A DNA stretch of 64,000 nt. Source: Macrostomum hystrix (Eukaryota; Animalia; Platyhelminthes). Made by a program: the position numbers and the translations under genes. Numbering within the stretch: the stretch's first letter is position 1; every line of letters begins with the position of its first letter. Location: contig CATNEN010000041.1 of assembly GCA_950097015.1 (NCBI GenBank), positions 3,100,001-3,164,000 on the forward strand. Direction: 5' to 3'. A model generated the notes under the pieces. It was not told where the DNA came from and ran no database searches. It worked only from the letters and a program-made list of their open reading frames with translations. This document shows, piece after piece, positions 1 to 64,000 of the stretch.

Positions 1-236
1 GCCGGACTCCAGCTGTCCCATCTCAGCCGGACTCCAGCTGTCCCATCTCAACCGGACTCCAGCTGTCCCATCTCAGCCGGACTCCAGCTGTCCCATCTCA
101 GCCGGACTCCAGCTGTCCCATCTCAGCCGGACTCCAGCTGTCCCATCTCAGCCGGACACCAGCTGTCCCATCTCAGCCGGACTCCAGCTGTCCCATCTCA
201 GCCGGACTCCAGCTGTCCCATCTCAGCCGGACTCAC
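1..236. repeat. 25-bp minisatellite (gccggactccagctgtcccatctca) at the start of gene A intron 2
   Basis: About 9 near-identical units in view. On the minus strand the array begins at the donor GTGAGTCCGGC. Confidence 0.95.
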
Positions 237-987
237 AGTTGCAGGTGGCCTCAGTCCAAAGATTGCTGTAGCCGATGCCCACCTGGGTGAGCGCCCGCAC
301 AATGAGAGTCCTCTGCTGCTGGTTGTTTAGGCGAGAAAGGCGAATTTGAGGCACATTGGGCACGCTGGCGGCGCTGCTGCACCACTGACTGGCGACAGTG
401 TAGTTCACCTGCTGCCGGCTGCCGACTGCCCGGAAGTAGTAGCACAGGCCCAGCTGCGACTCGTAGTACAGCTGCCAGCCGGAACCGGCTGGAAGGCACG
501 TCGCGGCCTGCGCGGGCTGCGCTGAAAGACCTGGGGGCAGCGCAGCAGCGGTGTTTCTCTAGGTTTCTCTGCCTAACTCTGAGCAGCCTCACCTGCCTCA
601 CCTCACCTCATACTGCTCAGCCATCAGCTGACCCACACGCACAACAGCCTCACCTGCATCACAGTGCTCAGCCATCAGCTGACCCACACGCACAACAGCC
701 TCACTTGCATCACAGTGCTCAGCCATCAGCTGACCCACACGCACAACAGCCTCACTTGCACCACAGTGCTCTGCCTTCAGCTGACCCACACGCACAACAG
801 CCTCACCTGCATCACAGTGCTCTGCCATCAGCTGACCCACACGCACAACAGCCTCACTTGCATCACAGTGCTCAGCCATCAGCTGACCCACACGCACAAC
901 AGCCTCACCTGCATCACAGTGCTCAGCCATGGACTCACCTGCAAGGACAAGCAGTTGCAGCGGAAGCAGACTGGCAGCGACCCACAT
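237..987 (-). CDS. Gene A: secreted/membrane C-type-lectin-like protein, 5' exons only (paralogue of gene B; continues off the left edge)
   Basis: Exon 939-987 encodes signal peptide MWVAASLLPLQLLVLA and ends at G|GTGAGT. Exon 237-530 (ccccag| ... AACT|GTGAGT, 294 nt, phase 1-1) encodes CLPAGSGWQLYYESQLGLCYYF...NYTVASQWC...LWTEATCN. This aligns with gene B CTLPSNGW..LGLCVY..NYSASATLC..VWTQAACN and has the intron at the same position. Confidence 0.75.
602..938. repeat. 51-bp minisatellite in gene A intron 1, unit contains GCA(G/A)|GTGAG
   Basis: ctcac motifs at 653, 704, 755, 806, 857 and 908 (51-bp spacing). Confidence 0.95.
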
Positions 988-1709
988 CTTTCTGGCCAGG
1001 TGAGACACTGCAACTTCCGTGCTGTTCTGTTTTGGCTCCGAGAGCAGTTGTGGGCAGCGGCCAGCCATTTGCCACGGTAAATAAAGGAAAAACCGATTGC
1101 CAAGAGATGCGTCGTTAAAAAGCGCCCCTAGCAACCAAAAGAGAGAAGCAGCAGGACAAACGCGGAGTGCTAAATGAAAAGAGGAGGCGAAGGGACAATG
1201 CCACAGGCTTCCCAGTTTTTCTGAAGAGACTGACATGAATTATGAATGGCTGCTTCTGTGTCCAGCCTCCCGGAGCACCATCACTGCCGGGTCTCCGCGG
1301 CAGTAGTGCAATGTCTCGCTTGCATCTCCCGCATCCTTGTGGAAGGGCCATTGTTTCCAGCTGTGCAGTGGGATTTCTTCCCAGTTTTCTTAGTTGGCGA
1401 GTATATAGCGCCTGGCGGAGGCGAGACGCTTCTGCTCTGCTCTGCCCTCCCCAGCTCTGTAGAGAAGGGAGACTCGTGTACATGTATTCAATCCTCGCCT
1501 CAAAGTCAGAATGTAAAACATTTCAAAGCGCAGTGTTTGAGTGAGTTAAAACTTTGCCGCTGCACAAAGTATTTAAAACTTTTTTTTCTTAGCGAGGGAG
1601 TAAATATTTCGTATACAGTTGTCAAAATAAAACCATTTAAGAATTCATTCAGTCTAGAAGTTAGAATTCAAGTCTAGAAAAATGATACGCAAAAATTTGA
1701 TTGGGAAGG

Positions 1710-3998
1710 GTGAGTTCACTAGTATGGGATTAGTTCACTAGTATGGGATTAGTCCATTAGTATGGGATTAGTTCACTAGTACGGGATTAGTTCACTAGTA
1801 TGGGATTATTCCATTAGTATGGGATTAGTTCACTAGTACGGGATTAGTTCACTAGTATGGGATTAGTCCATTAGTATGGGATTAGTTCACTAGTACGGGA
1901 TTAGTTCACTAGTATGGGATTAGTCCATTAGTATGGGATTAGTCCATTAGTATGGGATTAGTTCACTAGTATGGGATTAGTTCACAGTATGGGATTAGTT
2001 CACTAGTATGGGATTAGTCCATTAGTATGGGATTAGTTCACTAGTACGGGATTAGTTCACTAGTATGGGATTAGTCCATTAGTACGGGATTAGTTCACTA
2101 GTATGGGATTAGTTCACAAGTATGGGATTAGTCCATTAGTATGGGATTAGTTCACTAGTATGGGATTAGTCCATTAGTATGGGATGAGTTCACTAGTATG
2201 GGATTAGTTCACTAGTATGGGATTAGTTCACTAGTATGGGATTAGTTCACTAGTATGGGATTAGTTCACTAGTATGGGATTAGTCCATTATTATGGGATT
2301 AGTTCACTAGTATGGGATGAGTTCACAGTATGGGATTAGTTCACTAGTATGGGATGAGTTCACAGTATGGGATTAGTTCACTAGTATGGGATTAGTTCAC
2401 TAGTATGGGATTAGTCCATTAGTATGGGATTAGTTCACTAGTATGGGATGAGTTCACTAGTATGGGATTAGTTCACCAGTATGGGATTAGTTCACTAGTA
2501 TGGGATTAGTTCACTAGTATGGGATTAGTCCATTAGTATGGGATTAGTTCACTACTATGGGATTAGTTCACTAGTATGGGATGAGTTCACAGTATGGGAT
2601 TAGTTCACTAGTATGGGATTAGTCCATTAGTATGGGATTAGTTCACTAGTACGGGATTAGTTCACTAGTATGGGATTAATTCACTAGTATGGGATTAGTT
2701 CACTATTATGGGATTAGTTCACTAGTATGGGATTAGTTCACAGTATGGGATTAGTTCACTAGTATGGGATTAGTCCATTAGTATGGGATTAGTTCACTAG
2801 TACGGGATTAGTTCACTAGTATGGGATTAGTCCATTAGTACGGGATTAGTTCACTAGTATGGGATTAGTTCACAAGTATGGGATTAGTCCATTAGTATGG
2901 GATTAGTTCACTAGTATGGGATTAGTCCATTAGTATGGGATGAGTTCACTAGTATGGGATTAGTTCACTAGTATGGGATGAGTTCACAGTATGGGATTAG
3001 TTCACTAGTATGGGATTAGTTCACTAGTATGGGATTAGTCCATTAGTATGGGATTAGTCCATTAGTATGGGATTAGTCCATTAGTATGGGATTAGTCCAT
3101 TAGTATGGGATTAGTCCATTAGTATGGGATTAGTCCATTAGTATGGGATTAGTCCATTAGTATGGGATTAGTCCATTAGTATGGGATTAGTCCATTAGTA
3201 TGGGATTAGTTCACTAGTATGGGATTAGTTCACTAGTATGGGATTAGTTCACTAGTATGGGATTAGTCCATTAGTATGGGATTAGTTCACTAGTATGGGA
3301 TTAGTTCACTAGTATGGGATGAGTTCACAGTATGGGATTAGTTCACTAGTATGGGATTAGTTCACTAGTATGGGATTAGTCCATTAGTATGGGATTAGTC
3401 CATTAGTATGGGATTAGTTCACTAGTATGGGATTAGTTCATTAGTATGGGATTAGTTCACTATTATGGGATTAGTTCACTAGTATGGGATTAGTTCACTA
3501 GTATGGGATTAGTTCACTAGTATGGGATTAGTTCACTAGTATGTGATTAGTCCATTAGTATGGGATTAGTTCACTAGTATGGGATTAGTCCATTAGTATG
3601 GGATTAGTTCACTACTATGGGATTAGTTCACTAGTATGGGATTAGTTCACTAGTATGGGATTAGTTCACTAGTATGGGATTAGTCCATTAGTATGGGATT
3701 AGTTCACTAGTATGGGATTAGTTCACTAGTATGGGATGAGTTCACAGTATGGGATTAGTTCACTAGTATGGGATTAGTTCACTAGTATGGGATTAGTTCA
3801 CTAGTATGGGATTAGTTCACTAGTATGGGATTAGTCCATTAGTATGGGATTAGTCCATTAGTATGGGATTAGTCCATTAGTATGGGATTAGTCCATTAGT
3901 ATGGGATTAGTCCATTAGTATGGGATTAGTCCATTAGTATGGGATTAGTCCATTAGTATGGGATTAGTCCATTAGTATGGGATTAGTCCATTAGTATT
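1710..3998. repeat. 19-bp minisatellite (tagttcactagtatgggat / tagtccattagtatgggat)
   Basis: About 120 units in two main variants. It lies between the 3' end of gene B and the 5' end of gene A. Confidence 0.97.
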
Positions 3999-4352
3999 GG
4001 ACCAACCAAAAGAACGGACGGCACTTTTGAGCCAGCTTAGTAGCAAATTACTGCTCGGTCTATACAGGACTTTTGTGCATACTAGTCAAACTTTTAAAGT
4101 GGCCCGCTTACCCAATGTGCAGCATAAAATGTAACTCCATTCTGTTTGTCTTATCGTACGAGCATAACATCTACCCCTGACTTTGATGTACATGACTGCG
4201 ACTGCTTCTCTTGCCATTCTATTTTTAGAATTTTTTATAAGGAGGTCTTCGCTAGCGAAGTCAATACACTGATAGCTACAATTTTAGCTGCAGTAATGAA
4301 AAGTGTTTCAGTGTTTTTTCTCTGCGTTTGAAGTCTTGGCGAGTCTGCTGAG

Positions 4353-4579
4353 CTATTGACTCTTCCGCATCTCAATCTTCAGCTTGATGCGGTGCAAGTT
4401 GGTGCGCAGCAGCTTCACATCCCGGGTGATGGTGGTCAGGTCCAGGATGAGGATGGTGCTGAAGAAAACGATCAGGATGATGATGACCACCAGGCCAAGA
4501 GACTCGGCGCCTTCGGCCTCCTGGGCTGGCGGAATGTAGCGAGTACCACCACCAGACAGCAACAACGGATCCGTTTGCT
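4353..4579 (-). CDS. Duplicate copy of the gene B terminal (transmembrane) exon
   Basis: Same sequence as 6644-6870, with an intact acceptor (catcgcag|AG) and a TAG stop. Confidence 0.6.
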
Positions 4580-4589
4580 CTGCGATGAG

Positions 4590-4909
4590 GTAGGTGGAAT
4601 AAGGGGTGGGTGGAATCAGGGGTGGGTCGAATCAGGACTGGGTGGAATCACGGGTTGCTGGAATCAGGGGTGGGTGGAATCAGGACTGGGTGGAACCAGG
4701 GGTTGCTGGAATCAGAGGTGGGTGGAATCAGGGGTGGCTGGAATCAGGGGTTGCTGGAATCAGGGGTGGGTGGAATCAGGGGTGGGTGGAATCAGGGGTG
4801 GGTGGAATCAGGGGTGGTTGGAATAAGGGGTGGGTGGAATCAGGACTGGGTGGAATCAGGGGTTGCTGGAATCAGGGGTGGCTATAATCAGGGATTGCTG
4901 GAATCAGGG
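4590..4909. repeat. 16-bp minisatellite (ggaatcaggggtgggt), duplicated part
   Basis: G-rich tandem units matching 6881-7200. Confidence 0.9.
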
Positions 4910-7200
4910 GTGAGTTCACTAGTATGGGATGAGTTCACAGTATGGGATTAGTTCACTAGTATGGGATTAGTCCATTAGTATGGGATTAGTTCACTAGTAC
5001 GGGATTAGTTCACTAGTATGGGATTAATTCACTAGTATGGGATTAGTTCACTATTATGGGATTAGTTCACTAGTATGGGATTAGTTCACAGTATGGGATT
5101 AGTTCACTAGTATGGGATTAGTCCATTAGTATGGGATTAGTTCACTAGTACGGGATTAGTTCACTAGTATGGGATTAGTCCATTAGTACGGGATTAGTTC
5201 ACTAGTATGGGATTAGTTCACAAGTATGGGATTAGTCCATTAGTATGGGATTAGTTCACTAGTATGGGATTAGTCCATTAGTATGGGATGAGTTCACTAG
5301 TATGGGATTAGTTCACTAGTATGGGATGAGTTCACAGTATGGGATTAGTTCACTAGTATGGGATTAGTTCACTAGTATGGGATTAGTCCATTAGTATGGG
5401 ATTAGTCCATTAGTATGGGATTAGTCCATTAGTATGGGATTAGTCCATTAGTATGGGATTAGTCCATTAGTATGGGATTAGTCCATTAGTATGGGATTAG
5501 TCCATTAGTATGGGATTAGTCCATTAGTATGGGATTAGTCCATTAGTATGGGATTAGTTCACTAGTATGGGATTAGTTCACTAGTATGGGATTAGTTCAC
5601 TAGTATGGGATTAGTCCATTAGTATGGGATTAGTTCACTAGTATGGGATTAGTTCACTAGTATGGGATGAGTTCACAGTATGGGATTAGTTCACTAGTAT
5701 GGGATTAGTTCACTAGTATGGGATTAGTCCATTAGTATGGGATTAGTCCATTAGTATGGGATTAGTTCACTAGTATGGGATTAGTTCATTAGTATGGGAT
5801 TAGTTCACTATTATGGGATTAGTTCACTAGTATGGGATTAGTTCACTAGTATGGGATTAGTTCACTAGTATGGGATTAGTTCACTAGTATGTGATTAGTC
5901 CATTAGTATGGGATTAGTTCACTAGTATGGGATTAGTCCATTAGTATGGGATTAGTTCACTACTATGGGATTAGTTCACTAGTATGGGATTAGTTCACTA
6001 GTATGGGATTAGTTCACTAGTATGGGATTAGTCCATTAGTATGGGATTAGTTCACTAGTATGGGATTAGTTCACTAGTATGGGATGAGTTCACAGTATGG
6101 GATTAGTTCACTAGTATGGGATTAGTTCACTAGTATGGGATTAGTTCACTAGTATGGGATTAGTTCACTAGTATGGGATTAGTCCATTAGTATGGGATTA
6201 GTCCATTAGTATGGGATTAGTCCATTAGTATGGGATTAGTCCATTAGTATGGGATTAGTCCATTAGTATGGGATTAGTCCATTAGTATTGGACCAACCAA
6301 AAGAACGGACGGCACTTTTGAGCCAGCTTAGTTGCGAATTACTGCTCGGTCTATACAGGACTTTTGTGCATACTAGTCAAACTTTTAAAGTGGCCCGCTT
6401 ACCCAATGTGCAGCATAAAATGTAACTCCATTCTGTTTGTCTTATCGTACGAGCATAACATCTACCCCTGACTTTGATGTACATGACTGCGACTGCTTCT
6501 CTTGCCATTCTATTTTTAGAATTTTTTATAAGGAGGTCTTCGCTAGCGAAGTCAATACACTGATAGCTACAATTTTAGCTGCAGTAATGAAAAGTGTTTC
6601 AGTGTTTTTTCTCTGCGTTTGAAGTCTTGGCGAGTCTGCTGAGCTATTGACTCTTCCGCATCTCAATCTTCAGCTTGATGCGGTGCAAGTTGGTGCGCAG
6701 CAGCTTCACATCCCGGGTGATGGTGGTCAGGTCCAGGATGAGGATGGTGCTGAAGAAAACGATCAGGATGATGATGACCACCAGGCCAAGAGACTCGGCG
6801 CCTTCGGCCTCCTGGGCTGGCGGAATGTAGCGAGTACCACCACCAGACAGCAACAACGGATCCGTTTGCTCTGCGATGAGGTAGGTGGAATAAGGGGTGG
6901 GTGGAATCAGGGGTGGGTCGAATCAGGACTGGGTGGAATCACGGGTTGCTGGAATCAGGGGTGGGTGGAATCAGGACTGGGTGGAACCAGGGGTTGCTGG
7001 AATCAGAGGTGGGTGGAATCAGGGGTGGCTGGAATCAGGGGTTGCTGGAATCAGGGGTGGGTGGAATCAGGGGTGGGTGGAATCAGGGGTGGGTGGAATC
7101 AGGGGTGGTTGGAATAAGGGGTGGGTGGAATCAGGACTGGGTGGAATCAGGGGTTGCTGGAATCAGGGGTGGCTATAATCAGGGATTGCTGGAATCAGGG
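4910..7200. repeat. Second copy of a ~2.3-kb tandem segmental duplication (first copy ~2562-4909)
   Basis: The unique tract 3999-4589 recurs at 6290-6880 (offset 2291). It includes the terminal exon of gene B and parts of the 19-bp and 16-bp arrays. Two substitutions were seen (tagcaaatt vs ttgcgaatt). Confidence 0.93.
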
Positions 7201-10200
7201 GTGGCTGGAATCAGGGGTGGGTGGAATCAGGGGTTGCTGGAATCAGGGGTGGCTATAATCAGGGGTTGCTGGAATCAGGGGTGGCTGGAATCAGGGGTGG
7301 GTGGAATCAGGGGTTGCTGGAATCAGGGGTGGCTATAATCAGGGGTTGCTGGAATCAGGGTTGGGTGGAATCAGGACGGGTGGAATCAGGGGTTGTTGGA
7401 ATCAGGGGTGGGTGGAATCAGGGGTGGGTGGAATCAGGGGTGGCTGGAATCAGGGGTGGGTGGAATCAGGGGTTGCTGGAATCAGGGGTGGCTATAATCA
7501 GGGGTTGCTGGAATCAGGGTTGGGTGGAATCAGGACGGGTGGAATCAGGGGTTGTTGGAATCAGGGGTGGGTGGAATCAGGGGTGGGTGGAATCAGGGTT
7601 GGGTGGAATCAGGACTGGGTGGAATCAGGGGTTGCTGGAATCAGGGGTGGGTGGAATCAGGGGTGGGTGGAATCAAGTCATTGCTCTAGTAGGACCCAAG
7701 TTGAGGGGAATCATATTGCACAGCGAATCAGAATCGAGAAGTATGACGCATGAAGTGATTTAGCTTCAGCGCTTACTAATGCAGGAGGAGACTCTGAAGC
7801 TCCAAGTACCGCTGCTGGCGCAATTGACCTCGGTTGAGTTGTCCAGCTTGGACTGGCCGCCTTCGCCCGGCGAGTTCATCTGGTGGCCAGACAGGCAGGT
7901 GAAACGAACCCGGGCCCCATATTCCAGTTCCGTTGACGTGGCGAACTCCGGGATGCTCATCCTGACCACTGTCTCGTCCGGCCTCGTTACGATCAGCGTG
8001 TCGTTGAAGTTGGACTGTAGCAGGTAGACCAGCAAGTTGTTCTGCTGCGTGAGGATCACAATCTCCTTCGTCAGGCAGGTGATGGCTTCGTGGGTGGAGA
8101 TGGCAGGTTGGGTTTTATCCGCTGCAGAGTGCGAAGTTAAATATTCACTGCTCAGCAGCTCACAGCCACCCACGTCAGTGACCCTACTTACAGCCACTCC
8201 AGTCAGTGACCCTACTCACAGACACTCCATTCAGTGACCCTACTTACAGCCACTCCAGTCAGTGACCCTACTCACAGCCACTCCAGTCAGTGACCCTACT
8301 CACAGCCACTCCATTCAGTGACCCTACTCACAGCCACTCCAGTCAGTGACCCTACTCACAGCCACTCCAGTCAGTGACCCTACTCACAGCCACTCCAGTC
8401 AGTGACCCTACTCACAGCCACTCCATTCAGTGACCCTACTAACAGCCACTCCAGTCAGTGACCCTACTAACAGCCACTCCAGTCAGTGACCCTACTCACA
8501 GCCACTCCATTCAGTGACCCTACTCACAGCCACTCCAGTCAGTGACCCTACTCACAGCCACTCCAGTCAGTGACCCTACTCACAGCCACTCCAGTCAGTG
8601 ACCCTACTCACAGCCACTCCATTCAGTGACCCTACTAACAGCCACTCCAGTCAGTGACCCTACTCACAGCCACTCCAGTCAGTGACCCTACTCACAGCCA
8701 CTCCATTCAGTGACCCTACTAACAGCCACTCCAGTCAGTGACCCTACTCACGGCTCAACTGCTCAGCCTACTCACTGATAAGCAGGGCACATTTGGAAAG
8801 TGCTCAGTGCTCACCCTTGCAGTCCATGATGTCCTTGCTAAGCACGGTGCCGCCGAAAGGGAACCAGACGGCCGTGTTGTTGGTGCCGTTGTTAGGCAGG
8901 TCGCACTTGAGCGACTTGTCATAGGTGCGGTCCATGAAGAAGTTGCCCTCCTGCCGGCAGCGGATGGACACCTCATTGGGGTAGTAGGGGAAGCGGTTGC
9001 TCTCATCCGAGGTAAAGGACCTGTCCTTCAGCCTGTTGAAGGCTTTGTAGGCCACCATCTTGGTATAGTCGTAGAACGGCATGCTTTCCTTGCAGCGGAC
9101 GGCTGGAGACGGGAATCCGGGAGTGGGAATTCTCAGAAAGCGCAGGAATTTGACCTACCTGGCCTACTGGCAACCCCTGGCTCACCCGTGCAGACAACCA
9201 GCGTGGTAGGCATCCACATGCCCAGGCTGGGGTTGAGGTCGCTCTGACCGCACTCGAGCTGCGCTGCGGTGGTGGTCTCGTCAAGCACGCTGACGTAGCC
9301 GCGCTTGCACTGCAGGCCGATCGTCTCACCGAACCGGTACTTGCGATTGGGGTCCACGGCGGACTTGTAGTCCTCCACATCCTGGATGATGGTCTTGTTC
9401 AGCAGCATCCAGCCCTGGCAGCTGCTGGCTGCAAAGTGCGACATTCGGCTCTGCTTTGATAAGCACTTTCGTGTCAAAAGATTTACCCGTCCGTCTATAA
9501 ATTGAACCTGATTTGGTAGACAATATGAGCATGAGTTTGAGGTTGAGCACGGCTGAAGAGACTCACGTTGGCAGGCCTCCAGCGGCTGCATGATGCCGAT
9601 CTGCAAGAAGCTGACGGTGCCGCGGCCGTCGCTGCCACCCGGCTGAAATGCGCAGAAGAACAGGTTTCTCGACGCGGAGGCTGCCTTGTCCACGGAGCCA
9701 CCGGCCAGCACGATCTCTGAAGGCCGGTAGTAGCCGGGGGCGCAGTTGAAGCGCACGGTCTGGTTGGCGAAGGCCGGGACACTGAGGCGCATTGTCACGC
9801 TGTTGTAGCCGGACACCGTGGACGGGTCACATTGCGGAGCTGGAGTGTCGGAGCAACAGAGAATTATTTTTACCTGCTGATCAGTAGGCAGGCTCGCACA
9901 TTACTCTTGCCGCAATAGGCATTCTAAGAAATTCTGTCAATCAGTAGGCAGGCTCGCACATTACTCTTGCCGCAATAGGCATTCTAAGAAATTCTGTCAA
10001 TCAGTAGGCAGGCTCGCACATTACTCTTGCCGCAATAGGCATTCTAAGAAATTCTGTCAATCAGTAGGCAGGCTCGCACATTACTCTTGCCGCAATAGGC
10101 ATTCTAAGAAATTCTGTCAATCAGTAGGCAGGCTCGCACATTACTCTTGCCGCAATAGGCATTCTAAGAAATTCTGTCAATCAGTAGGCAGGCTCGCACA

Positions 10201-27022: not shown

Positions 27023-27147
27023 ACATTGTGCGGCAGGATGGTGATTGACGCTGTCTGCGTACATTTTAACTGCCGAGTTTTGTTATTATCTACAAAGCGC
27101 TTTCGATGGCTGCTCCAGTAGCCTAGAATATTAATATACGCATAAGG

Positions 27148-50939: not shown

Positions 50940-51059
50940 GCGCTAGTTTGAGCACACTGTGGACTTGAGTCGGCTCTGATTTGACAAGTGCTTAACCAGA
51001 GACATTGGTCAGCGTGAAGCGAAGTTATTAAGGTTGTGTTGAATATCTGCTAGTCATTC

Positions 51060-51330
51060 GTTGCTAGATCTGAAGCTAGTGAAAGCGCAGTCAGTTGCTA
51101 GATCTGAAGCTAGTGAAGCGCAGTCAGTTGCTAGATCTGAAGCTAGTGAAGCGCAGTCAGTTGCTAGATCTGAAGCTAGTGAAGCGCAGTCAGTTGCTAG
51201 ATCTGAAGCTAGTGAAACGCAGTCAGTTGCTAGATCTGAAGCTAGTGAAACGCAGTCAGTTGCTAGATCTGAAGCTAGTGAAGCGCAGTCAGTTGCTAGA
51301 TCTGAAGCTAGTGAAACGCAGTCAGTTGCT
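51060..51330. repeat. 33-bp minisatellite downstream of the PFK stop
   Basis: Unit gcgcagtcagttgctagatctgaagctagtgaa. Confidence 0.94.
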
Positions 51331-52439: not shown

Positions 52440-53172
52440 TATATAGATCTGTGAAGTCAGAGCTGACTGGGATAAACCAGGGCTATAGATCTGTGAAGTC
52501 AGAGCTGACTGGGATAAACCAGGGCTATAGATATGTAAAGTCAGAGCTGACTGGGATAAACCAAGGCTATAGATCTGTAAAGTCAGAGCTGACTGGGATA
52601 AACCAGGGCTATAGATCTGTGAAGTCAGAGCTGACTGGGATAAACCAGGGCTATAGATATGTAAAGTCAGAGCTGACTGGCATAAACCAGGGCTATAGAT
52701 CTGTGAAGTCAGAGCTGACTGGGATAAACCAGGGCTATAGATATGTAAAGTCAGAGCTGACTGGGATAAACCAAGGCTATAGATATGTAAAGTCAGAGCT
52801 GACTGGGATAAACCAGGGCTATAGATATGTAAAGTCAGAGCTGACTGGGATAAACCAAGGCTATAGATATGTAAAGTCAGAGCTGACTGGGATAAACCAA
52901 GGCTATAGATCTGTAAAGTCAGAGCTGACTGGGATAAACCAGGGCTATAGATATGTAAAGTCAGAGCTGACTGGGATAAACCAAGGCTATAGATATGTAA
53001 AGTCAGAGCTGACTGGGATAAACCAAGGCTATAGATATGTAAAGTCAGAGCTGACTGGGATAAACCAGGGCTATAGATCTGTAAAGTCAGAGCTGACTGG
53101 GATAAACCAAGGCTATAGATATGTAAAGTCAGAGCTGACTGGGATAAACCAAGGCTATAGATATGTAAAGTC
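52440..53172. repeat. 42-bp minisatellite
   Basis: Unit agat(c/a)tgt(g/a)aagtcagagctgactgggataaacca(g/a)ggctat, ~17 copies. Confidence 0.96.
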
Positions 53173-54057
53173 ATGGTCAAGTCCGAGAGTATGACAAATT
53201 TTACGTGTGATTCGCGTTACGCGTTGGCGAATGACATCGCGAAAGCCGCTCGGCGTAACATTTTATTAATTAAAACTCAATTAACACTGTGGGTGTTGCG
53301 CAATGTGCTACTGTCAGTACCACACTGAGTGCGAGCACTTATACTGGCAGTGTTCATTTCTGTGCTTAGCATTTGATTGAAACTTGCTGCTGCAACGTGA
53401 AGCATCACACTGGCGGATCACAATGATTGCAAGTGCAGTTGTACAATGCAGTACAGGTACAGCAGTTACTGTACAATACTAGGCCAAACAATCTTACAGA
53501 TGGCAGCGGTGCAATACGAGTATATAAATTAATACTGAGCCGTTCGTGCAAGCGGCGTGTAAAGTTGTGTCGCACATCTCAAACGAATCACGTGACTGCG
53601 GCGGGTCTTGGGACTTCAAGGCAGATCAGTGTGACTATTACAATTATTAGTATAACCTGGGGCTGGACTAAGCAATTTTAGATTTATGATTAAGTCATTT
53701 CGAACTAATCAACGCTATATAGTGTCTGTTGTTTTTTCGAGTTGCTTACGTCTACTAAACTTGTCTAGTACTAAATACAACTCCTTGAGTACTTAGCGGC
53801 TCGAAAGTATTCCCCAGTTGAACTATGCTGTACAACACAGCCATTATTAAATAATAATGGGGATGATATATCTGGGCTTGATGGGAACTTTTTGGGCACA
53901 GACTTCAGTCAGATAATGGGCCTTAGTTTCTTTCGCAACTTGGTCGCTACAGTTGAAGCAGCTGGACAGCACCTCAGCTTCTGCGGTAGCTGAAGGCAGA
54001 AAGGCCTCTGTGAGGGCAGCGGCAGCGGCGGCGGCAGCAGAGACGGCAAGGAGTGGC

Positions 54058-56232
54058 TACCTGTGAAGGGTTCAGGGAGATCGGTGCCTGCATGAGTGAC
54101 TGTGGCAGCATGTGAAGGGTTCAGGGAGATCGGTGCCTGCATGAGTGACTGTGGCAGCCTGTGAAGGGCTCAGGGAGATCGGGACCTGCATGAGTGACTG
54201 TGGCAGCCTGTGAAGGGCTCAGGGAGATCGGGACCTGCATGAGTGACTGTGGCAGCCTGTAAAGGGTTCAGGTTGGTCTATATGGCTGCATGAGTGACTG
54301 TGGCAGCCTGTGAAGGGTTCAGGGTGGTCTATGGCTGCATTAGTGACTGTGGCAGCCTGTAAAGGGTTCAGGGTGGTCTATGGCTGCATGAGTGACTGTG
54401 GCAGCCTGTGAAGGGTTCAGGGTGGTCTATATGGCTGCATGAGTGACTGTGGCAGCCTGTAAAGGCTCCAGGGTGGTCTATATGGCTGCATGAGTGACTG
54501 TGGCAGCCTGTGAAGGGTTCAGGGTGGTCTATGGCTGCATGAGTGACTGTGGCAGCCTGTAAAGGGTTCAGGGTGGTCTATGGCTGCATGAGTGACTGTG
54601 GCAGCCTGTGAAGGGTTCAGGGTGGTCTATGGCTGCATGAGTGACTGTGGCAGCCTGTGAAGGGTTCAGGGTGGTCTATATGGCTGCATGAGTGACTGTG
54701 GCAGCCTGTGAAGGTTTCAGGGTTGTCTATGGCTGCATGAGTGACTGTGGCAGCCTGTGAAGGGTTCAGGGTGGTCTATGGCTGCATGAGTGACTGTGGC
54801 AGCCTGTGAAGGGTTCAGGGTGGTCTATGGCTGCATGAGTGACTGTGGCAGCCTGTAAATGGTTCAGGGTGGTCTATATGGCTGCATGAGTGACTGTGGC
54901 AGCCTGTGAAGGGTTCAGGGTGGTCTATGGCTGCATGAGTGACTGTGGCAGCCTGTGAAGGGTTCAGGGTGGTCTATATGGCTGCATGAGTGACTGTGGC
55001 AGCCTGTGAAGGGTTCAGGGTGGTCTATGGCTGCATGAGTGACTGTGGCAGCCTGTAAAGGGTTCAGGGTGGTCTATATGGCTGCATGAGTGACTGTGGC
55101 AGCCTGTGAAGGTTTCAGGGTTGTCTATGGCTGCATGAGTGACTGTGGCAGCCTGTGAAGGGCTCAGGGAGATCGGGACCTGCATGAGTGACTGTGGCAG
55201 CCTGTAAAGGGTTCAGGTTGGTCTATATGGCTGCATGAGTGACTGTGGCAGCCTGTGAAGGGTTCAGGGTGGTCTATGGCTGCATTAGTGACTGTGGCAG
55301 CCTGTAAAGGGTTCAGGGTGGTCTATGGCTGCATGAGTGACTGTGGCAGCCTGTGAAGGGTTCAGGGTGGTCTATATGGCTGCATGAGTGACTGTGGCAG
55401 CCTGTAAAGGCTCCAGGGTGGTCTATATGGCTGCATGAGTGACTGTGGCAGCCTGTGAAGGGTTCAGGGTGGTCTATGGCTGCATGAGTGACTGTGGCAG
55501 CCTGTAAAGGGTTCAGGGTGGTCTATGGCTGCATGAGTGACTGTGGCAGCCTGTGAAGGGTTCAGGGTGGTCTATGGCTGCATGAGTGACTGTGGCAGCC
55601 TGTGAAGGGTTCAGGGTGGTCTATATGGCTGCATGAGTGACTGTGGCAGCCTGTGAAGGTTTCAGGGTTGTCTATGGCTGCATGAGTGACTGTGGCAGCC
55701 TGTGAAGGGTTCAGGGTGGTCTATGGCTGCATGAGTGACTGTGGCAGCCTGTGAAGGGTTCAGGGTGGTCTATGGCTGCATGAGTGACTGTGGCAGCCTG
55801 TAAATGGTTCAGGGTGGTCTATATGGCTGCATGAGTGACTGTGGCAGCCTTTGAAGGGTTCAGGGTGGTCTATGGCTGCATGAGTGACTGTGGCAGCCTG
55901 TGAAGGGTTCAGGGTGGTCTATATGGCTGCATGAGTGACTGTGGCAGCCTGTGAAGGGTTCAGGGTGGTCTATGGCTGCATGAGTGACTGTGGCAGCCTG
56001 TAAAGGGTTCAGGGTGGTCTATATGGCTGCATGAGTGACTGTGGCAGCCTGTGAAGGTTTCAGGGTTGTCTATGGCTGCATGAGTGACTGTGGCAGCCTG
56101 TGAAGGGTTCAGGGTGGTCTATATGGCTGCATGAGTGACTGTGGCAGCCTGTGAAGGTTTCAGGGTTGTCTATGGCTGCATGAGTGACTGTGGCAGCCTG
56201 TGAAGGGTTCAGGGTGGTCTATGGCTGCATGA
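54058..56232. repeat. 49/51-bp minisatellite with an internal 945-bp higher-order duplication
   Basis: Unit gcatgagtgactgtggcagcctgtgaagggttcagggtggtct(at)atggct. Confidence 0.96.
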
Positions 56233-56687
56233 GCTTTAACACCTCGCAGTATCAGTAACGAAGTGGACTGCATTTGAAGAAAACATATTTGAATTAGTTC
56301 TTAATGAATTCTTCTAAATGATACGAGTATATCATAGCGAGAAAATTTGCGTACTAATAGAAGCAAAAGCAACTGTTGCCACTGCACCAGATTACTCGTG
56401 CATTACGAGCTAGCTAGAAAGCTTTTAGCTAGATTTCCAGTGCAGGCAATGGGCTAAATTTCATTTCGAGGTCATTTTGGCTCTGCAACAAAACTGGAAA
56501 GCGCCGGCTGCGTCAGTCCGCTCGGGCACACCGGGGTGTTTCATCAGTGCGGATTCACTTGCACTTTATCTGCTTAGCGGCCAAACCCTGTGCAGCCCCG
56601 AAACCAGCTCTTACTGGCGTCTGCTGATTTGAGAACTGGAAGGAAGCCATCGACTTGCTCGTGCGACAGGCTGCGAGGCACCGGCAG

Positions 56688-57198
56688 TTTTAGCTGTTTA
56701 TCTGCTTCTTTAGCTGGTTATGTGCTACTTTAGCTGTTTATCTGCTACTTTAGCTGTTTATCTGCTTCTTTAGCTGTTTATCTGCTTCTTTAGCTGTTTA
56801 TGTGCTACTTTAGCTGTTTATCTGCTACTTTAGCTGTTTATGTGCTACTTTAGCTGTTTATCTGCTTCTTTAGCTGGTTATGTGCTAATTTAGCTGTTTA
56901 TGTGCTACTTTAGCTGTTTATGTGCTACTTTAGCTGTTTATGTGCTACTTTAGCTGTTTATGCGCTTCTTTAGCTGTTTATGTGCTTCTTTAGCTGGTTA
57001 TGTGCTACTTTAGCTGTTTATCTGCTTCTTTAGCTGTTTATCTGCTTCTTTAGCTGTTTATCTGCTTCTTTAGCTGTTTATGTGCTAATTTAGCTGTTTA
57101 TCTGCTACTTTAGCTGTTTATCTGCTACTTTAGCTGTTTATGTGCTTCTTTAGCTGTTTATGTGCTACTTAAGCTGTTCATGTGCTACTTAAGCTGTT
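56688..57198. repeat. 20-bp minisatellite
   Basis: Unit tttagctgtttat(g/c)tgct(a/t)c. Confidence 0.95.
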
Positions 57199-57222
57199 AG
57201 CTGGCGAATGGCCACTGTTACC

Positions 57223-57729
57223 CATGGTCATAAGTACACTGGGAATTAACTGCACATGGTCATAAGTACGCTGGGAATTAACTGCACATGGTCATAAGTA
57301 CGCTGGGAATTAACTGCACATGGTCATAAGTACGCTGGGAATTAACTGCACATGGTCATAAGTACGCTGGGAATTAACTGCACATGGTCATAAGTACGCT
57401 GGGAATTAACTGCACATGGTCATAAGTACGCTGGGAATTAACTGCACATGGTCATAAGTACGCTGGGAATTAACTGCACATGGTCATAAGTACGCTGGGA
57501 ATTAACTGCACATGGCCATAAGTACGCTGGGAATTAACTGCACATGGTCATAAGTACGCTGGGAATTAACTGCACATGGTCATAAGTACGCTGGGAATTA
57601 ACTGCACATGGTCATAAGTACGCTGGGAATTAACTGCACATGGTCATAAGTACGCTGGGAATTAACTGCACATGGTCATAAGTACGCTGGGAATTAACTG
57701 CACATGGTCATAAGTACGCTGGGAATTAC
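57223..57729. repeat. 32-bp near-perfect minisatellite
   Basis: Unit catggtcataagtacgctgggaattaactgca. It begins on the minus strand at GAAG|GTAATT. Confidence 0.96.
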
Positions 57730-58894: not shown

Positions 58895-59125
58895 GATATG
58901 GGGATATGTCTTATAGGGATATGGGGATATGTCTTACAGGGATATGGGGATATGTCTTATAGGGATATGGGGATATGTCTTATAGGGATATGGGGATATG
59001 TCTTATAGGGATATGGGGATATGTCTTATTGGGATATGGGGATATGTCTTATAGGGATATGGGGATATGTCTTATAGGGATATGGGGATATGTCTTATAG
59101 GGATATGGGGATGTCTTATTGGGAT
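58895..59125. repeat. 23-bp minisatellite
   Basis: Unit atatggggatatgtcttataggg. Confidence 0.93.
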
Positions 59126-59776
59126 ACAAGACAAAAGCTATAGTTTCTATCATTTCTAAATGTTTAAATCTGGCATTCCATGCAGAGACACACTGCTGCT
59201 CCAGAACATAAATCACAAGCTGTCACTTCTACTTCAATGAAATTCTGTTTCTATTTCTAAGAAGTACGAGCTAAATGCTAAAATAAGACCAGGTAAAACA
59301 AAAAACGAAACAAGCCGGTGACAGAAAATATTCGTTGAGGTCTAGTTGAGATGAGCACTGAGAGTCATGAGCACACATACTCAACGGGTGCAATGGGTGA
59401 CAGATTTGCGGCAAAGAAAACTTTATCAAAAGCTCAGGTGTCGGGAAAAGACTAAAGTTGAAATAAACAGAAAGTAAGGTCTAAGATCTAGAAATAATAA
59501 AATGCCGGCCACATCTACTGGCTGGTCAGAGGAAACTTCAGGTCAGGTGGTAAGTGATAAGCTGAGTAAAGTTAACAATAATACATTGCATTACAATTCT
59601 ATACAGTGTTTGCCGCTCTGCTCTGTTAGTTCAGCATGTCGCGACATTCTCATGTTCTTTCTAAATCCCCTCTGAGTTCATTCCAGCTAACCCAGCTGAC
59701 TCTGCTCAAATTGTCTGGCTCTCTCGCCATCTTCTGATTGGTCCATCGCCCGCCCTTGAGGCTCGGTCTCTTGACC

Positions 59777-59918
59777 TGTACCACACCTGGTCCTCTTATC
59801 CTAGCGCCACCGCCCAGTATGAGGGGCTTTAGCTACACCTGGGACTTTGTACCACACCTGGTCCTCTTATCCTAGCGCCGCCGCCCAGTTTGAGGGGCTT
59901 TAGCTACACCTGGGGCTT
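59777..59918. repeat. 71-bp direct duplication (2 copies)
   Basis: tgtaccacacctggtcctcttatcctagcgcc.. starts at 59777 and 59848. Confidence 0.85.
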
Positions 59919-60459
59919 TGTGTCTCGCATTGTTTCTAAGGCCCTTACATCAGTTCACAGTGGCGGCATCGAGCTGCAGTCGGTGTCAGTTGCTTCCAGT
60001 CGGCGCCCCTGTCTCTCGCCCGCGTGCTTACCCGCACTGCCGGGCCTCAGACGAAGGCCGGCGACTTTCCTTTCCCCAGCAGCGCCCTTCTCTCTGGGGA
60101 TCGCGGCGGCATGGAATTAGGGCCGGGGGGCGGAGCGGCTGAGGCCGGGGCTGCGAAGGCGCATCATGAAAGTTGCGGAAAGCGGCCCATAGCAACCCAC
60201 TCTCCAGCGCTAACAAAGTCGAATAAGACGCTGCGCACTTATAGCTTCAAAAACTGGAAACTCATGGCCAGATATCGCAAAATATTCAATCTCAAATTGA
60301 TTAATGGCTCGTACGAGCTATGCAGCAAGAAATACGGACTGCCGGCATTCAATCAGGCTGATGAATGCGCGGCATGCACAGCTGGCGATGTACGCTCGTG
60401 CTTTGACATGATTGGACCGGAAATGCTTTGACTGTTGCATGCTGCATCTTGCAGTGGGA

Positions 60460-61105
60460 TCTGTGAGAGCTGTGCGATCTGTGAGAGCTGTGCGATCTGT
60501 GAGAGCTGTGCGAGCTGTAAGATATGTGAGAGCTGTGAGAATTGTGCGAGCTCTGAGAGTTTTAAGAGCTGTGAGAGTTTTAAGAGCTGTGAGAGTTTTA
60601 AGAGCTGTGAGAGTTTTAAGAGCTGTGAGAGTTTTGAGAGCTGTGAGAGTTTTAAGAGCTGTGAGAGTTTTAAGAGCTGTGAGAGTTTTAAGAGCTGTGA
60701 GAGTTTTGAGAGCTGTGAGAGTTTTAAGAGCTGTGAGAGTTTTAAGAGCTGTGAGAGTTTTAAGAGCTGTGAGAGTTTTGAGAGCTGTGAGAGTTTTGAG
60801 AGCTGTGAGAGTTTTGAGAGCTGTGAGAGTTTTAAGAGCTGTGAGAGTTTTAAGAGCTGTGAGAGTTTTAAGAGCTGTGAGAGTTTTGAGAGCTGTGAGA
60901 GTTTTGAGAGCTGTGAGAGTTTTGAGAGCTGTGAGAGTTTTAAGAGCTGTGAGAGTTTTAAGAGCTGTGAGAGTTTTAAGAGCTGTGAGAGTTTTAAGAG
61001 CTGTGAGAGTTTTAAGAGCTGTGAGACTTTTAAGAGCTGTGAGAGTAGTCACAGCTGTGAGAGCAGTGAGAGCAGAAACAGCTGTGAGAGCTGTGAGAAC
61101 AGTGA
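60460..61105. repeat. 18-bp minisatellite in a Kv2 intron
   Basis: Unit (g/a)agagctgtgagagtttt. It is the source of the RAVRVL, LTALKT and SCESFK ORFs. Confidence 0.96.
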
Positions 61106-61350
61106 GTATGGGAGATCAGTTAATCCATAATATGCTCACTGAACTGCAACTTTATAAAGGGGTGAGAAAGATGAGCAGCATAGAAATATAACTGGCTAAA
61201 AGCTTTCGGAAGTGAATGAAAGTGAAATGCGCCAGGCCATAAACAAACAAACTGTGATGCCCGGAGTCGCTGGCCAAGCTGCTCTCTAATGGCTTGTGTG
61301 ATTCCGCTAAAATTGAATTTGCTTTACGCAGCAGTTTGCAGCTGTCTTAC

Positions 61351-63508
61351 CTGGCGAATTGGAGGATGAAACCTGCAGCTCCTTTTTCGAGTTTTTGAAG
61401 CGGTCCTTCAAGGTCTTCTTCTTTGCTGGGGCAATCGGCGGAGACGCGGCTGACGTCATTGGCAGCGGCGGAGGTGACGGCGTGTGCAGCTCCTCGTCCT
61501 CCGGCGCGAAGTGGATTTTCTCGCGTCGCTGCGGTGGCAGGCGCAGAGGCTGAGGCGGCGAGTGGCGACAGGCGGGACAGGAGGCCCTAAGCGACAGGCT
61601 GGGCGACTGGTTGTTGGAGCGGCCCTGAGGAACTGCTGTCGAGCAGGTGGTGCCCGTGGCAGACGAGTCACTGCGGTCTCTGTGGCTCTCAACTGCTGAT
61701 GTTGGCTGCTGCTGCTGTGGCTCCACCGGGGAGCCGGGCGCGTGGCTGTTGCAGGTGAGGTAGCTGTCAGAGCTGGCCAGGCTGTGGCTGTGGCTGGTCA
61801 AGTCCGGCCGACTGATCAAGGATGGCGTGGCGGTAGCCGCTGCTGCAGCGGCCGTGGCTGCGGCGCTGAGGCTTCGAGGCAGACTGGCCTCCCGGCAAGG
61901 CTGCAACTGGTACTGCGGGGGCGGTGGGAGCTGCGTCTGCTGCTGATGCTGCTGAAAGCGCATGGCTCCGCGCTGAACACCAAGGAGCTCATCTTCGGAG
62001 TCGATGTAAAGAATTTCCTGAAAATGTATTATTTGTAGACACGAATTGGCTGGAGCTCGGGAAATCAAGCATTTCCCTGCGAGAGAAAGTCTACAGACAG
62101 CCAGCATCTACACGTACAAAAAGGAGGCCTCTTTATCTACAATTCGCGACAGCGAGTGCGCATGTACTTTCTCTATAGTGCAAAAGGACACAGTTAACGA
62201 TCAGCTGAATTCACTCGCCTGCCGGCCTCCTCGGCTCACCGCTGCGCCGAGGGTAGCAGCCGACGCCTGTTGCTGCTGCTGCTGTTGATGAGAGCTGACT
62301 GGTGGACCCGTCCGCCCACTCTTAAGCATCCAGGAGGCCCGGAGTTCGCGCCCTCCGTCGGACCTCTCGAATGAAACTGCTGCTCCGACGTCGTGAGAGT
62401 TGTCGACACCGCTGCCACCGCCTGCGCCTGGATTCTGGAAGAATACCAGAGGCTCCAGTTCCTGATGCTGCTCATGATGAAGATGCCGGTGATGGTGCTG
62501 GTGATGCTGGAGGAAATTTTGCAGCTGCTGCTGGCGCTCAGAGCAGCCGCCCGAGCTGCCGCCGCTCACCCGGTCGGCGCCGATACCGCCTCCTGCGATG
62601 CCGGCTCCTGTTGATGCTCCGCCACCGACTGCGCTGGCGCTCTCGTGGCTGGCTCGTCGGCGAGCGGTGGAGGCAATCGAGATGAGGCTGCCCTTCCGCT
62701 TGGCAGCGTCGATGGCCTCCATGCGGCGCTGGGCCTTCTCCCGGCGCGACTGCTCCTTATAGTACTCGGCGAAGTTGTTGACGATAATAGGTATCGGCAG
62801 GGCCACCACGAGAACGCCGCAAATGCAGCAGACGCTGCCCACAAGCTTGCCAAGGAAGGTCTTTGGCACAATGTCACCATAGCCAACTGTTGTCATGGTG
62901 ATGGCAGCCCACCAGAATGTGGCGGGGATGGACTTAAAGGGATTCGGCTTATCTCCTTCGCCTGGTTCGTCCTTCTCGGCGAAGTAGGCAAGGCTGGAGA
63001 AGAGCAGGACGCCCAGCAGCACGAACATGATGAGCAGTCCCAGCTCCTTGTAGCTGCGCCTGAGCGTGTAGCCCAGCGACTGCAGGCCGGTGGAGTGTCG
63101 GGCGAGCTTCAGGACACGCAGGATGCGCAGGATGCGGAAGATCTGCACGATCTTGCGCACGGAGGTCAGCGAAGTGTACGAGTCGCCGCTGCTATCGTCC
63201 TGCAGGCTGCGCATGAGGATGAGGGACAGGTAGTACGGCACTATGGCGATCAGGTCGATCACGTTCATGGGCCCCTTTAGGAACTTGCAGGTGTCAGGCG
63301 AGGCCCAGAGCCGCAGCACGTACTCCAGGGTGAACCACACGATGCAGACCGCCTCCACGATCTCCAGCTTGGGGTTGTCCTCCATGGTGTACACCGGGGT
63401 GCTGTTGGCGACAGTCTTTGTGTGGTTTAGCTGCAGCTCCGGGATCGTGTTCAGGGTCAGGCCTACCGTGGACAGCACGATGAACAGAATGGAGATTATC
63501 GCCACCAC
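61351..63508 (-). CDS. Shab: Voltage-gated K+ channel, Kv2/Shab family: S1-S6 exon plus C-terminal exon (T1 exon beyond the right edge; final exon unresolved)
   Basis: Exon 62240-63508 (cccgcag|[14 protein letters not shown], matching the Kv2 S1 exon start) contains S4 [25 protein letters not shown], pore TMTTVGYGD and the Kv2-type S6 [10 protein letters not shown]. Exon 61351-62017 is phase 0-1. Confidence 0.93.
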
Positions 63509-63911
63509 CTGCGGGTCGGCGACAGAATGGGTGGAAAACTGATAGCGAGTCCAAGAAGCTGGTTGCGTCATCTGCAGAGGCAGCTGAGAATTATCAGCCG
63601 ATAATCTCTTTCAGCTACAAAACTGGTCACAAAATTCATTCGTCCCGCTGCGTGATTCGATGCTGGAATGCTTGAATAACCAGTTACTCAGCGCACTTGG
63701 CATGATAGCTTTGTACTTTTAGCAAATATGTTCATCAGGTTGAACTATAAGTGCAGAGGAAATGCGGCCAGTGAAAGTGCATTTCAATGATCAGTAAAAA
63801 ATAGATCGGATGTCCCGATATCGCTGCCTCAGGTGGCTCGAATTCACGAACAACACTCAGGAAGTACATGTGTGCTGACTAACGAAAGGCATACAAACAG
63901 ATCTACCCGAG

Positions 63912-64000
63912 CCACTGCACTGACTCTCCAAGGGGCTAGCGAATCACCTCCCAACTGGCCGAGGTCTGCCACTGCACTGACTCTCCAAGGGGCTAGCGAA
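63912..64000. repeat. 57-bp tandem repeat running off the right edge (probably in Kv2 intron)
   Basis: ccactgcactgactctccaaggggctagcgaa at 63912 and 63969. Confidence 0.8.

What the first reader, a model, noticed from the sequence alone, without database searches (positions are those of the whole stretch)
1..64000. Minisatellites seeded on splice junctions: repeat units are copies of the neighbouring exon-intron boundary
Seen: many arrays start exactly at a splice site, and the unit contains the junction itself. Donor side: 236 (25-bp), 938 (51-bp), 12758 (27-bp), 31980 (19-bp), 46717 (52-bp), 57729 (32-bp). Acceptor side: 28902 (27-bp, CTGCAG|CAAAAC), 54061 (49-bp, CCCTTCACAG|G), 56694 (20-bp, TAAACAG|CTAAA). 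Other intronic units carry GTGAG or CTGAC on the sense strand (8170, 24770, 29535, 49855). In two arrays only the first copy keeps the donor (GTGAGT vs GGAGT at 236; GTAAT vs GTTAAT at 57729). Inference: a process that amplifies short segments at exon edges, such as splicing- or R-loop-coupled repair or rolling-circle amplification, drives intron growth here. I am not aware of a named system for this, but I cannot search the literature.
Basis: partly seen in the sequence, partly recalled or inferred. Interest (0 to 1): 0.8.

Follow-up and report, generated by a model that had tools for sequence, protein, structure and literature searches.

The report
Private minisatellites swelling flatworm introns
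This stretch of a Macrostomum-like flatworm genome is 37% short tandem arrays that bloat introns and 3' regions. A few of them copy a splice donor, a kind already known from amphioxus and the human F7 gene, but the arrays are not drawn to splice sites.

Summary
The arrays are real: 44 minisatellites cover 37% of the window. The claim that they are seeded on splice junctions does not hold.

- Four donors are supported: 46717 by PFK homology, 236 and 938 by paralog and reading-frame continuity, and 31980 by eye against a M. lignano ortholog.
- One is open: 12758, in a 5' UTR.
- Four are not supported: 57729, 56694, 54061 and 28902 lie downstream of stop codons fixed by M. lignano orthologs. This includes all three acceptor claims.

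In 81 homology-defined introns, 60% hold arrays and 54% of intron bases are array. The non-array remainder equals the length of array-free introns, so arrays do drive intron growth. Only 3 of 64 arrays overlap an exon edge, against 15.4 expected from random placement. Units are no more like their own exon edges than like other edges, and their sense strand is C-rich. Arrays are about as dense in 3' inter-gene DNA.

Junction-spanning arrays are best read as tolerated by-products. They are known as amphioxus "mirages" and the human F7 IVS7 VNTR. This scan already reported them elsewhere in this genome. New here: array units share a TGGGAT core, enriched 13-fold. No RNA test was possible.

The parts
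1..234 (-). 25-bp array, about 29 copies, running 488 bp further left of the window. It fills intron 2 of lectin-sushi gene A. The intron's first base is 236. The units are a degenerate copy of the exon edge plus donor with the T of GT missing.
531..939 (-). Intron 1 of gene A, after the signal-peptide exon. It holds the 51-bp array at 595-930. Each unit carries CAG|GTGAGG. The array starts 9 nt after the real donor.
1713..6292 (-). 19-bp array of about 239 copies between genes B and A. It is interrupted by an exact 713-bp copy (4200-4912) of 6491-7203, which holds gene B's transmembrane exon and a 16-bp array.
6880..12774 (-). Gene B (lectin-sushi receptor) arrays: 16-bp at 6880-7675, 28-bp at 8159-8751, 60-bp at 9880-10421, and 27-bp x 58.7 at 11191-12774. 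The last carries GTAAGT in every unit and lies upstream of the ATG at 11096. The claimed donor at 12758 is untested.
24727..26028 (+). RBR E3 ligase introns 1 (24727-25320) and 2 (25736-26028). Arrays at 24775-25234 start 48 nt from the donor; the array at 25744-25966 starts 8 nt from the donor. None overlaps an exon.
26625..29123 (.). Three arrays (26625-26894, 27151-28101, 28896-29123) between the stop codons of the convergent RBR gene and gene C. They make up about 51% of that DNA. The claimed acceptor at 28902 is here, outside any coding intron.
29522..30192 (-). Gene C intron holding the 40-bp array 29535-30144. The array starts 48 nt after the donor and ends 13 nt before the acceptor. 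Units carry GCTGAC, which resembles a branch point.
31540..31980 (-). Gene C intron whose 19-bp array (31582-31980) begins at the first intron base. Units resemble the edge of micro-exon 31981-32004 plus GTGAG.
   Evidence: the alignment to P0010 is by eye, and BLASTP was silent
36434..41450 (-). Casein kinase 1 introns 3, 2 and 1 (36434-38116, 38388-40432, 40616-41450), with seven arrays. None touches a junction.
46705..47365 (+). 52-bp x 12.7 array spanning the donor of PFK intron 1 (46717-47505). The unit is 12 nt of exon plus 40 nt of intron. This is the one rigorous mirage-type array.
48348..50574 (+). PFK intron 3 (48348-48709) has a 32-bp array 40 nt from the donor and an exact copy of part of exon 3 at about 48563-48590. 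PFK intron 5 (49842-50574) has a 31-bp array that leaves 13 nt at the donor and 22 nt at the acceptor.
51060..57728 (.). Five arrays (51060-51332, 52442-53173, 54053-56233, 56689-57198, 57223-57728) between the convergent stop codons of PFK (about 50960) and the 61-kb gene (57737-57739). They make up about 62% of that DNA.
58895..61106 (-). Three arrays in the roughly 3.3-kb intron between the exon ending near 61.36 kb and the last coding exon (about 58.0-57.74 kb) of the gene matched by M. lignano P0014.

Best explanation
The window comes from a Macrostomum-like flatworm genome. In this genome, short segments of non-coding DNA are repeatedly duplicated in tandem and expanded. Each intron or 3' region ends up with its own private minisatellite (units of 14-164 bp, 2 to about 240 copies).

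The likely machinery is ordinary: replication slippage, unequal exchange or template switching. It may be favoured at a short TGGGAT core. It acts without regard to splice sites.

Selection on splicing then shapes what survives:
- Arrays are kept out of exons.
- Arrays are kept away from the first ~8 nt of an intron.
- Arrays are kept away from the branch-point to acceptor stretch at the 3' end.
- A duplication that spans a donor is tolerated, because the exon-adjacent, most upstream 5' splice site goes on being used. This was shown for the human F7 IVS7 VNTR and is inferred here.

A minority of arrays therefore carry copies of exon edge plus GT. These are "mirage"-type arrays.

Shown here: the abundance of arrays, their contribution to intron length, their depletion at junctions, the donor-only pattern, and their density outside introns. 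Inferred: the mutational mechanism, which donor copy is used, and the role of selection.
For: Abundance: 44 arrays make up 37% of the window.

Introns: the sample is 81 homology-defined introns from PFK (two paralogs), RBR, CK1, 9 CCT genes, and kinesin and myosin genes.
- 49 of them hold arrays, and 54% of intron bases are array.
- The non-array remainder has a median of 170 nt, against 238 nt in array-free introns (p=0.22).
- Only 3 of 64 arrays overlap an exon edge, all at donors, against 15.4 expected (P=6.5e-6).
- Adding four more window introns by hand gives about 5 of 68 against about 17.
- In single-array introns, 27 of 39 arrays lie nearer the donor (p=0.024). This fits a longer protected stretch at the 3' end.

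Origin of units: units are unrelated to their own exon edges (Fisher 0.75 and 0.97).

Outside introns: arrays are as dense beyond stop codons. By my hand sums, 50960-57737 is about 62% array and 26563-29410 is about 51%.

Independent origin: the two PFK paralogs carry unrelated arrays in the same intron.

Template switching: an exact copy of an exon fragment sits inside the array region of PFK intron 3.

Core motif: TGGGAT occurs in 23 of 129 units against 1.8 in length-matched non-array DNA.

Precedents: PMC3087553 (mirages, regular splicing kept) and PMC1557585 (the most upstream 5'ss wins).

Taxon: M. lignano orthologs at 76-93% identity.
Against:
- The verified intron set is biased to conserved genes. 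In the fast-evolving lectin gene A and in gene C, donor-abutting arrays are commoner (3 of 4 arrays).
- The random-placement null assumes a uniform founding duplication and an ancestral intron length inferred from present sequence.
- The window shows a sense-strand excess of GTRAG in units (7 sense, 2 antisense, P=0.01 against shuffles). A few PFK units weakly resemble their own donor (p 0.014-0.04 each). Some arrays now inside introns may therefore have begun at a junction.
- AT-rich 5' intergenic stretches are nearly array-free. That leaves room for a link to transcription.
Confidence: 0.72

Rival explanations
1. A junction-targeted process, such as splicing-coupled or R-loop-coupled repair or rolling-circle amplification, copies exon-intron boundaries. 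These copies seed most intron arrays.
For: Four donor-abutting arrays in the window are real (46717, 236, 938, 31980). The window shows a sense-strand excess of GTRAG and GTRAGT in units. Arrays tend to sit nearer the donor. Three PFK-paralog units rank high against their own donor edge.
Against: Junction overlap is about 5-fold below random expectation. There is no general similarity to own edges. There is no GTRAG strand bias in verified introns (7 sense, 5 antisense), and the sense strand is C-rich, opposite to what favours R-loops. All three acceptor claims and one donor claim fall beyond stop codons. Arrays are as dense in 3' inter-gene DNA where nothing is known to be spliced.
Confidence: 0.07
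2. A sequence-specific process seeds or stabilises arrays at a short core, TGGGAT/ATCCCA. Candidates are a recombination or nicking hot spot, or a protein-binding site. Where arrays arise would then depend on where the core lies, not on splice sites. This refines the best explanation rather than excluding it.
For: TGGGAT is in 23 of 129 units against 1.8 expected, TGGGA in 38 against 6.2, and GGATCTG in 8 against 0.7. All have P<0.002 against length-matched non-array DNA from the same loci. There is no extended consensus, so common descent of the arrays is unlikely. There is no significant preference for the transcribed strand (6 sense, 14 antisense, p=0.12).
Against: Only about 18-29% of units carry the core. 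The enrichment could reflect which sequences expand or persist well (the motif-bearing strand is G-rich) rather than a dedicated factor. The arrays come from one window and about 40 gene loci, not a random genome sample. Other words, such as CAGTG and CAGCTG, are also enriched.
Confidence: 0.2
3. The arrays are kept because they do something, for example as intronic splicing enhancers or silencers, as decoy splice sites, or as sources of alternative in-frame donors.
For: In two arrays the donor is disabled in all but the first copy (236 and, nominally, 57729). Intron minisatellites have been linked to splicing decisions in C. elegans (PMC4039745; title and abstract only).
Against: Units are private and unrelated. 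Paralogous introns carry different arrays or none. Arrays are equally common beyond stop codons. No RNA evidence is available.
Confidence: 0.05

Closest known systems
"Mirage" minisatellites of amphioxus (Adh3, globin genes BflGb6/9; PMC3087553, citing Canestro et al. 2002)
   Same: Tandem repeats whose unit spans an exon-intron boundary, so each unit carries a splice signal. Units are 10-160 bp. They occur in several unrelated genes and are reported not to disturb normal splicing.
   Different: In amphioxus both 5' and 3' boundaries are reported duplicated. Here only donor-side cases survive checking. Here they are a small minority (about 5-20%) of a much larger population of intron and 3'-region arrays. 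Copy numbers reach 58 or more. Instability and splicing were not tested here.
Human F7 intron 7 37-bp VNTR (PMC1557585)
   Same: The first unit spans the exon-intron boundary, so the authentic donor is followed by identical pseudo-donors. [quoted passage not shown]
   Different: It is a single locus in a genome poor in such arrays. Choice of the first copy is inferred here, not shown.
Classical GC-rich minisatellites with a shared core (Jeffreys-type; from general knowledge)
   Same: Units of 10-100 bp, marked strand asymmetry (mean |GC skew| 0.43), and a short core shared by otherwise unrelated arrays (TGGGAT).
   Different: The core is different. The arrays are concentrated in introns and 3' regions of a compact 220-Mb genome rather than near chromosome ends. 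A link to recombination hot spots was not tested.
Tandem-repeat-rich Macrostomum lignano genome (PMC5730564)
   Same: Same genus-level lineage (orthologs at 76-93% identity). That paper reports 15% of the genome as simple and tandem repeats and mean introns of 1.1-1.4 kb.
   Different: In the passages I read, that paper does not describe arrays as the main component of introns or as spanning splice sites.

Membership tests
Mirage-type (junction-spanning) minisatellite | Head-to-tail array of a 10-160-bp unit | tested here: met
   TRF; for example 52 bp x 12.7 at 46705-47365.
Mirage-type (junction-spanning) minisatellite | Unit contains the exon edge plus the splice signal of a real exon-intron boundary | tested here: met
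   Met rigorously for 46717 (12 nt of conserved PFK exon plus GTGAGC). Met with small indels for 236 and 31980. For 938 only a consensus donor is copied. Not met for 57729, 56694, 54061 and 28902, which lie beyond stop codons.
Mirage-type (junction-spanning) minisatellite | Normal splicing retained, using the exon-adjacent site | not testable with these tools
No same-species transcript proteins were found. For PFK the reading frame requires the first copy, because 52 is not a multiple of 3.
Mirage-type (junction-spanning) minisatellite | Length instability or polymorphism | not tested
   No population or read data could be laid.
   3 of 64 observed against 15.4 expected, P(X<=3)=6.5e-6.
   Own-edge versus other-edge alignment scores: Fisher p 0.75 for donors and 0.97 for acceptors, n=55.
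   Window: GTRAG 7 sense, 2 antisense, P=0.01 against shuffles. Verified introns genome-wide: 7 sense, 5 antisense, not significant.
   About 51-62% array content between convergent stop codons (hand sums).
Core-bearing minisatellites | Short motif shared by unrelated arrays, above background | tested here: met
   TGGGAT in 23 of 129 units against 1.8 in length-matched non-array segments; P<0.002.

The most novel reading that the evidence does not exclude
Macrostomid genomes may run a sequence-specific minisatellite engine. A short double-stranded core (TGGGAT/ATCCCA) would mark where tandem arrays are born or expand in transcribed non-coding DNA. This engine, not transposons, would be the main driver of intron size in the lineage. 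Donor-spanning "mirage" arrays would be its tolerated fringe.
Probability: 0.2. Interest if true: 0.6.

Novelty: new member of a known kind. Interest (0 to 1): 0.35.

Why it matters
Intron size is usually put down to transposons and drift. In this sample, private minisatellites make up about half of intron DNA and account for essentially all the extra length of long introns. That is an unusual route to intron growth and easy to test genome-wide.

The donor-spanning arrays offer natural ladders of identical 5' splice sites, 12 to about 58 copies. They could be used to test how a flatworm spliceosome picks one site, as was done for F7.

The result also warns that a GT or AG at an array edge is not a splice site. 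Four of the nine junctions read from sequence alone lie beyond stop codons.

Tried and rejected
Those places were masked in all scripts and sent to no search tool afterwards.
2. Same-species transcript proteins. The word search with RBR exon 1 gave only relatives of 46% identity or less.
3. Relic junction copies. By eye, the units of PFK intron 5 and of the PFK paralog's introns looked like old copies of their donors. The formal own-edge versus other-edge test shows no general signal.
4. Intron gain by array expansion. Gene A has three array-filled introns that paralog B lacks, and the PFK paralogs differ at three intron positions. However, a C38 paralog has an intron at the position of A's intron 2, so loss in B is at least as likely. 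I dropped the idea.
5. Pfam on orphan exons of genes A, C and D gave nothing useful.
6. The exhaustive protein search with the 66-aa ORF at 53850-54047 gave no hit.
8. The last script, meant to give combined statistics with four extra introns, failed on an off-by-one error. Those combined figures are hand sums and are marked as such.
9. BLASTP of the 25-aa gene C exon against P0010 gave no alignment. Support for 31980 therefore rests on collinearity judged by eye.
Full report
**What is there.** TRF finds 64 rows. After removing overlaps these are 44 arrays covering 23,648 bp, 37% of the window. The window is G000:C41:3100001-3164000 of a 220-Mb genome. Two orphan ORFs have Macrostomum lignano orthologs at 76% and 93% identity, so this is a macrostomid flatworm, as earlier notes of the scan said.

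**Gene map** (homology, Pfam and codon scoring):
- Lectin-sushi gene A (-), which runs off the window's start.
- Its paralog B (-), about 6.6-12.8 kb.
- An EF-hand gene (+) at 17.0 kb.
- An RBR E3 ligase (+), 23.9-26.6 kb.
- Gene C (-), 29.4-33.4 kb, ortholog of M. lignano BOX15_Mlig001534g4.
- Casein kinase 1 (-), 36.1-41.7 kb.
- Phosphofructokinase, PFK (+), 46.3-51.0 kb.
- A gene (-) whose last two coding exons lie at about 61.4-62.1 kb and 57.74-58.0 kb.
- A Shaker-type channel ORF (-), 62.2-63.6 kb.

**The nine claimed junctions: four supported, all donors.**
- 46717. The exon ends in the conserved PFK motif IGGDGSLT(G), ACTG|GTGAGC. The 52-bp unit repeats the last 12 exon bases plus 40 intron bases.
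- 236. Gene A's exon ends CAACT|GTGAGT. After the array and about 100 unique bases, an acceptor restores the frame.
- 938. A signal-peptide exon ends CAG|GTGAGT and the intron is 531-939. The array proper starts 9 nt inside it. Each unit holds a consensus donor.
- 31980. A 24-nt micro-exon ends CAG|GTGAGG. Its frame joins the next exon to give WQSASSAGGTSLKLLLLQRLNLL, which by eye parallels M. lignano ...GSASARTSLNRLLLNRLSLL. BLASTP is silent at this length.

**One junction is open.** 12758 lies upstream of gene B's start codon. A 5'-UTR intron there is plausible but untested.

**Four junctions fail.**
- The ORF ending at 57740 has the same C-terminus as M. lignano P0014: 41 of 44 residues are identical and both stop after AAP. 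P0014's first half matches the ORF at 61.3-62.1 kb. The stop codon is therefore 57737-57739, and 57729, 56694 and 54061 all lie downstream of it. The 66-aa ORF next to 54061 has no relative among 1.84 billion representatives.
- Gene C's coding sequence ends near 29410, so 28902 also lies downstream of a stop.
- All three acceptor claims therefore fall.

**Is junction contact more than chance?** I defined introns from homology plus GT-AG and frame continuity.
- The window gave 10 introns and the PFK paralog gave 6.
- CCT genes gave 17.
- Kinesin and myosin genes gave 48.
- Of these 81 introns, 49 hold at least one minisatellite, for 64 arrays in all.
- Three arrays overlap an exon edge, all at donors, and two of those are in paralogous kinesins.
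- Suppose the founding unit fell anywhere in the pre-expansion intron, including across its ends. Then 15.4 overlaps are expected, and P(X<=3)=6.5e-6.
- Adding genes A and C by hand gives about 5 of 68 against about 17. For the window's own verified introns it is 3-4 of 17 against about 5.
- Junction-spanning arrays are thus at or below chance.
- Units score no better against their own exon edges than against other genes' edges (Fisher 0.75 and 0.97).
- In single-array introns, 27 of 39 arrays lie nearer the donor (p=0.024). The nearest non-overlapping arrays sit 8-14 nt from donors. This fits a short protected 5' end and a longer protected stretch from branch point to acceptor.

**Intron growth.** Arrays make up 54% of the 54.8 kb of sampled intron. 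What is left of array-bearing introns (median 170 nt) matches array-free introns (median 238 nt; p=0.22).

**Tests of the proposed mechanism.**
- In verified introns, GTRAG occurs in 7 units on the sense strand and 5 on the antisense strand.
- Units are C-rich on the sense strand (mean skew -0.185, 42 against 22, p=0.002). This is the opposite of what favours R-loops.
- Arrays are as dense beyond stop codons. About 62% of 50960-57737 and about 51% of 26563-29410 are array (hand sums).
- By contrast, the AT-rich stretches at 17.6-22.6 kb and 41.75-46.3 kb are nearly array-free.
- The two PFK paralogs carry unrelated arrays in the same intron.
- An exact copy of part of exon 3 sits in PFK intron 3, which points to template switching.

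**A shared core.** Across 129 arrays, the hexamer TGGGAT/ATCCCA is in 23 units against 1.8 in length-matched non-array DNA. TGGGA is in 38 against 6.2. There is no longer consensus and no significant strand preference relative to transcription.

**What is known.**
- Tandem repeats spanning exon-intron boundaries are called "mirages" in amphioxus (PMC3087553).
- The human F7 IVS7 VNTR has its first unit across the boundary, and the most upstream donor is used (PMC1557585).
- M. lignano is 15% simple and tandem repeat (PMC5730564).
- This scan had already followed up the same kind of array elsewhere in this genome.

**Limits.**
- No RNA evidence was obtained.
- The intron sample leans toward conserved genes.
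- The null model is simple.
- No joined exon model was ever searched.
- Places 47628-47684 were left out of all searches.

Noticed in passing
array units throughout the window (e.g. 26648, 32389, 35527, 46705, 48388, 52442, 57223) and loci L001-L043: Otherwise unrelated minisatellite units share a short core, TGGGAT/ATCCCA. It is in 23 of 129 units against 1.8 expected. The motif-bearing strand is G-rich and there is no longer consensus.
   Followed up: partly
window 62774-62887 (-): A full-length Rfam match to K_chan_RES, the Kv1 RNA-editing hairpin, lies inside the Shaker-type channel ORF (62.7 bits, gathering 51). The alignment marks about a dozen non-standard pairs, so it may reflect coding conservation only.
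   Followed up: partly
window about 41600-41612 (-): Casein kinase 1 exon 1 has a one-base frame break inside the glycine loop: ...KIGS, an extra T, then GSFGEIY. This could be an assembly indel, a real lesion, or an unseen splice.
   Followed up: no
window 48563-48590 versus 48085-48112 (+): An exact copy of about 28 nt from the start of PFK exon 3 sits in intron 3, just after the 32-bp array and before further degenerate unit fragments. It looks like a template-switch scar.
   Followed up: partly
window 4200-4912 versus 6491-7203: A 713-bp stretch is duplicated at 100% identity. It holds gene B's transmembrane exon and the start of a 16-bp array, and the copy is embedded in the 4.6-kb 19-bp array. 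It is either a recent duplication or an assembly artefact.
   Followed up: partly
window PFK versus L001 (C39:5968000-5977999); gene A versus gene B: Paralogs differ in intron positions. PFK intron 3 is unique to the window copy and two introns are unique to the C39 copy. Gene A has three array-filled introns where gene B has continuous exons. A C38 paralog shares at least one of them, which suggests loss in B.
   Followed up: partly
window about 57870-57960 (-): The last coding exon of the 61-kb gene matches M. lignano P0014 in one frame upstream (VQAPPAKIR...) and in another frame downstream (HSILKNKD...). This implies an indel or a tiny intron between them.
   Followed up: no
window about 29410-29420 (-): Gene C has TGA where the M. 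lignano ortholog has Trp (GWLTKAK). The protein would therefore end 6 residues early.
   Followed up: no
G000:C19:1-471 versus window 10566-11036: A contig end elsewhere in the assembly is 100% identical to part of gene B's first coding exon. It is probably a haplotig or an unplaced duplicate.
   Followed up: no
window 17600-22600 and 41750-46300: AT-rich (about 39-45% GC) stretches between genes are almost free of minisatellites. Introns and 3' inter-gene DNA are half array or more.
   Followed up: partly
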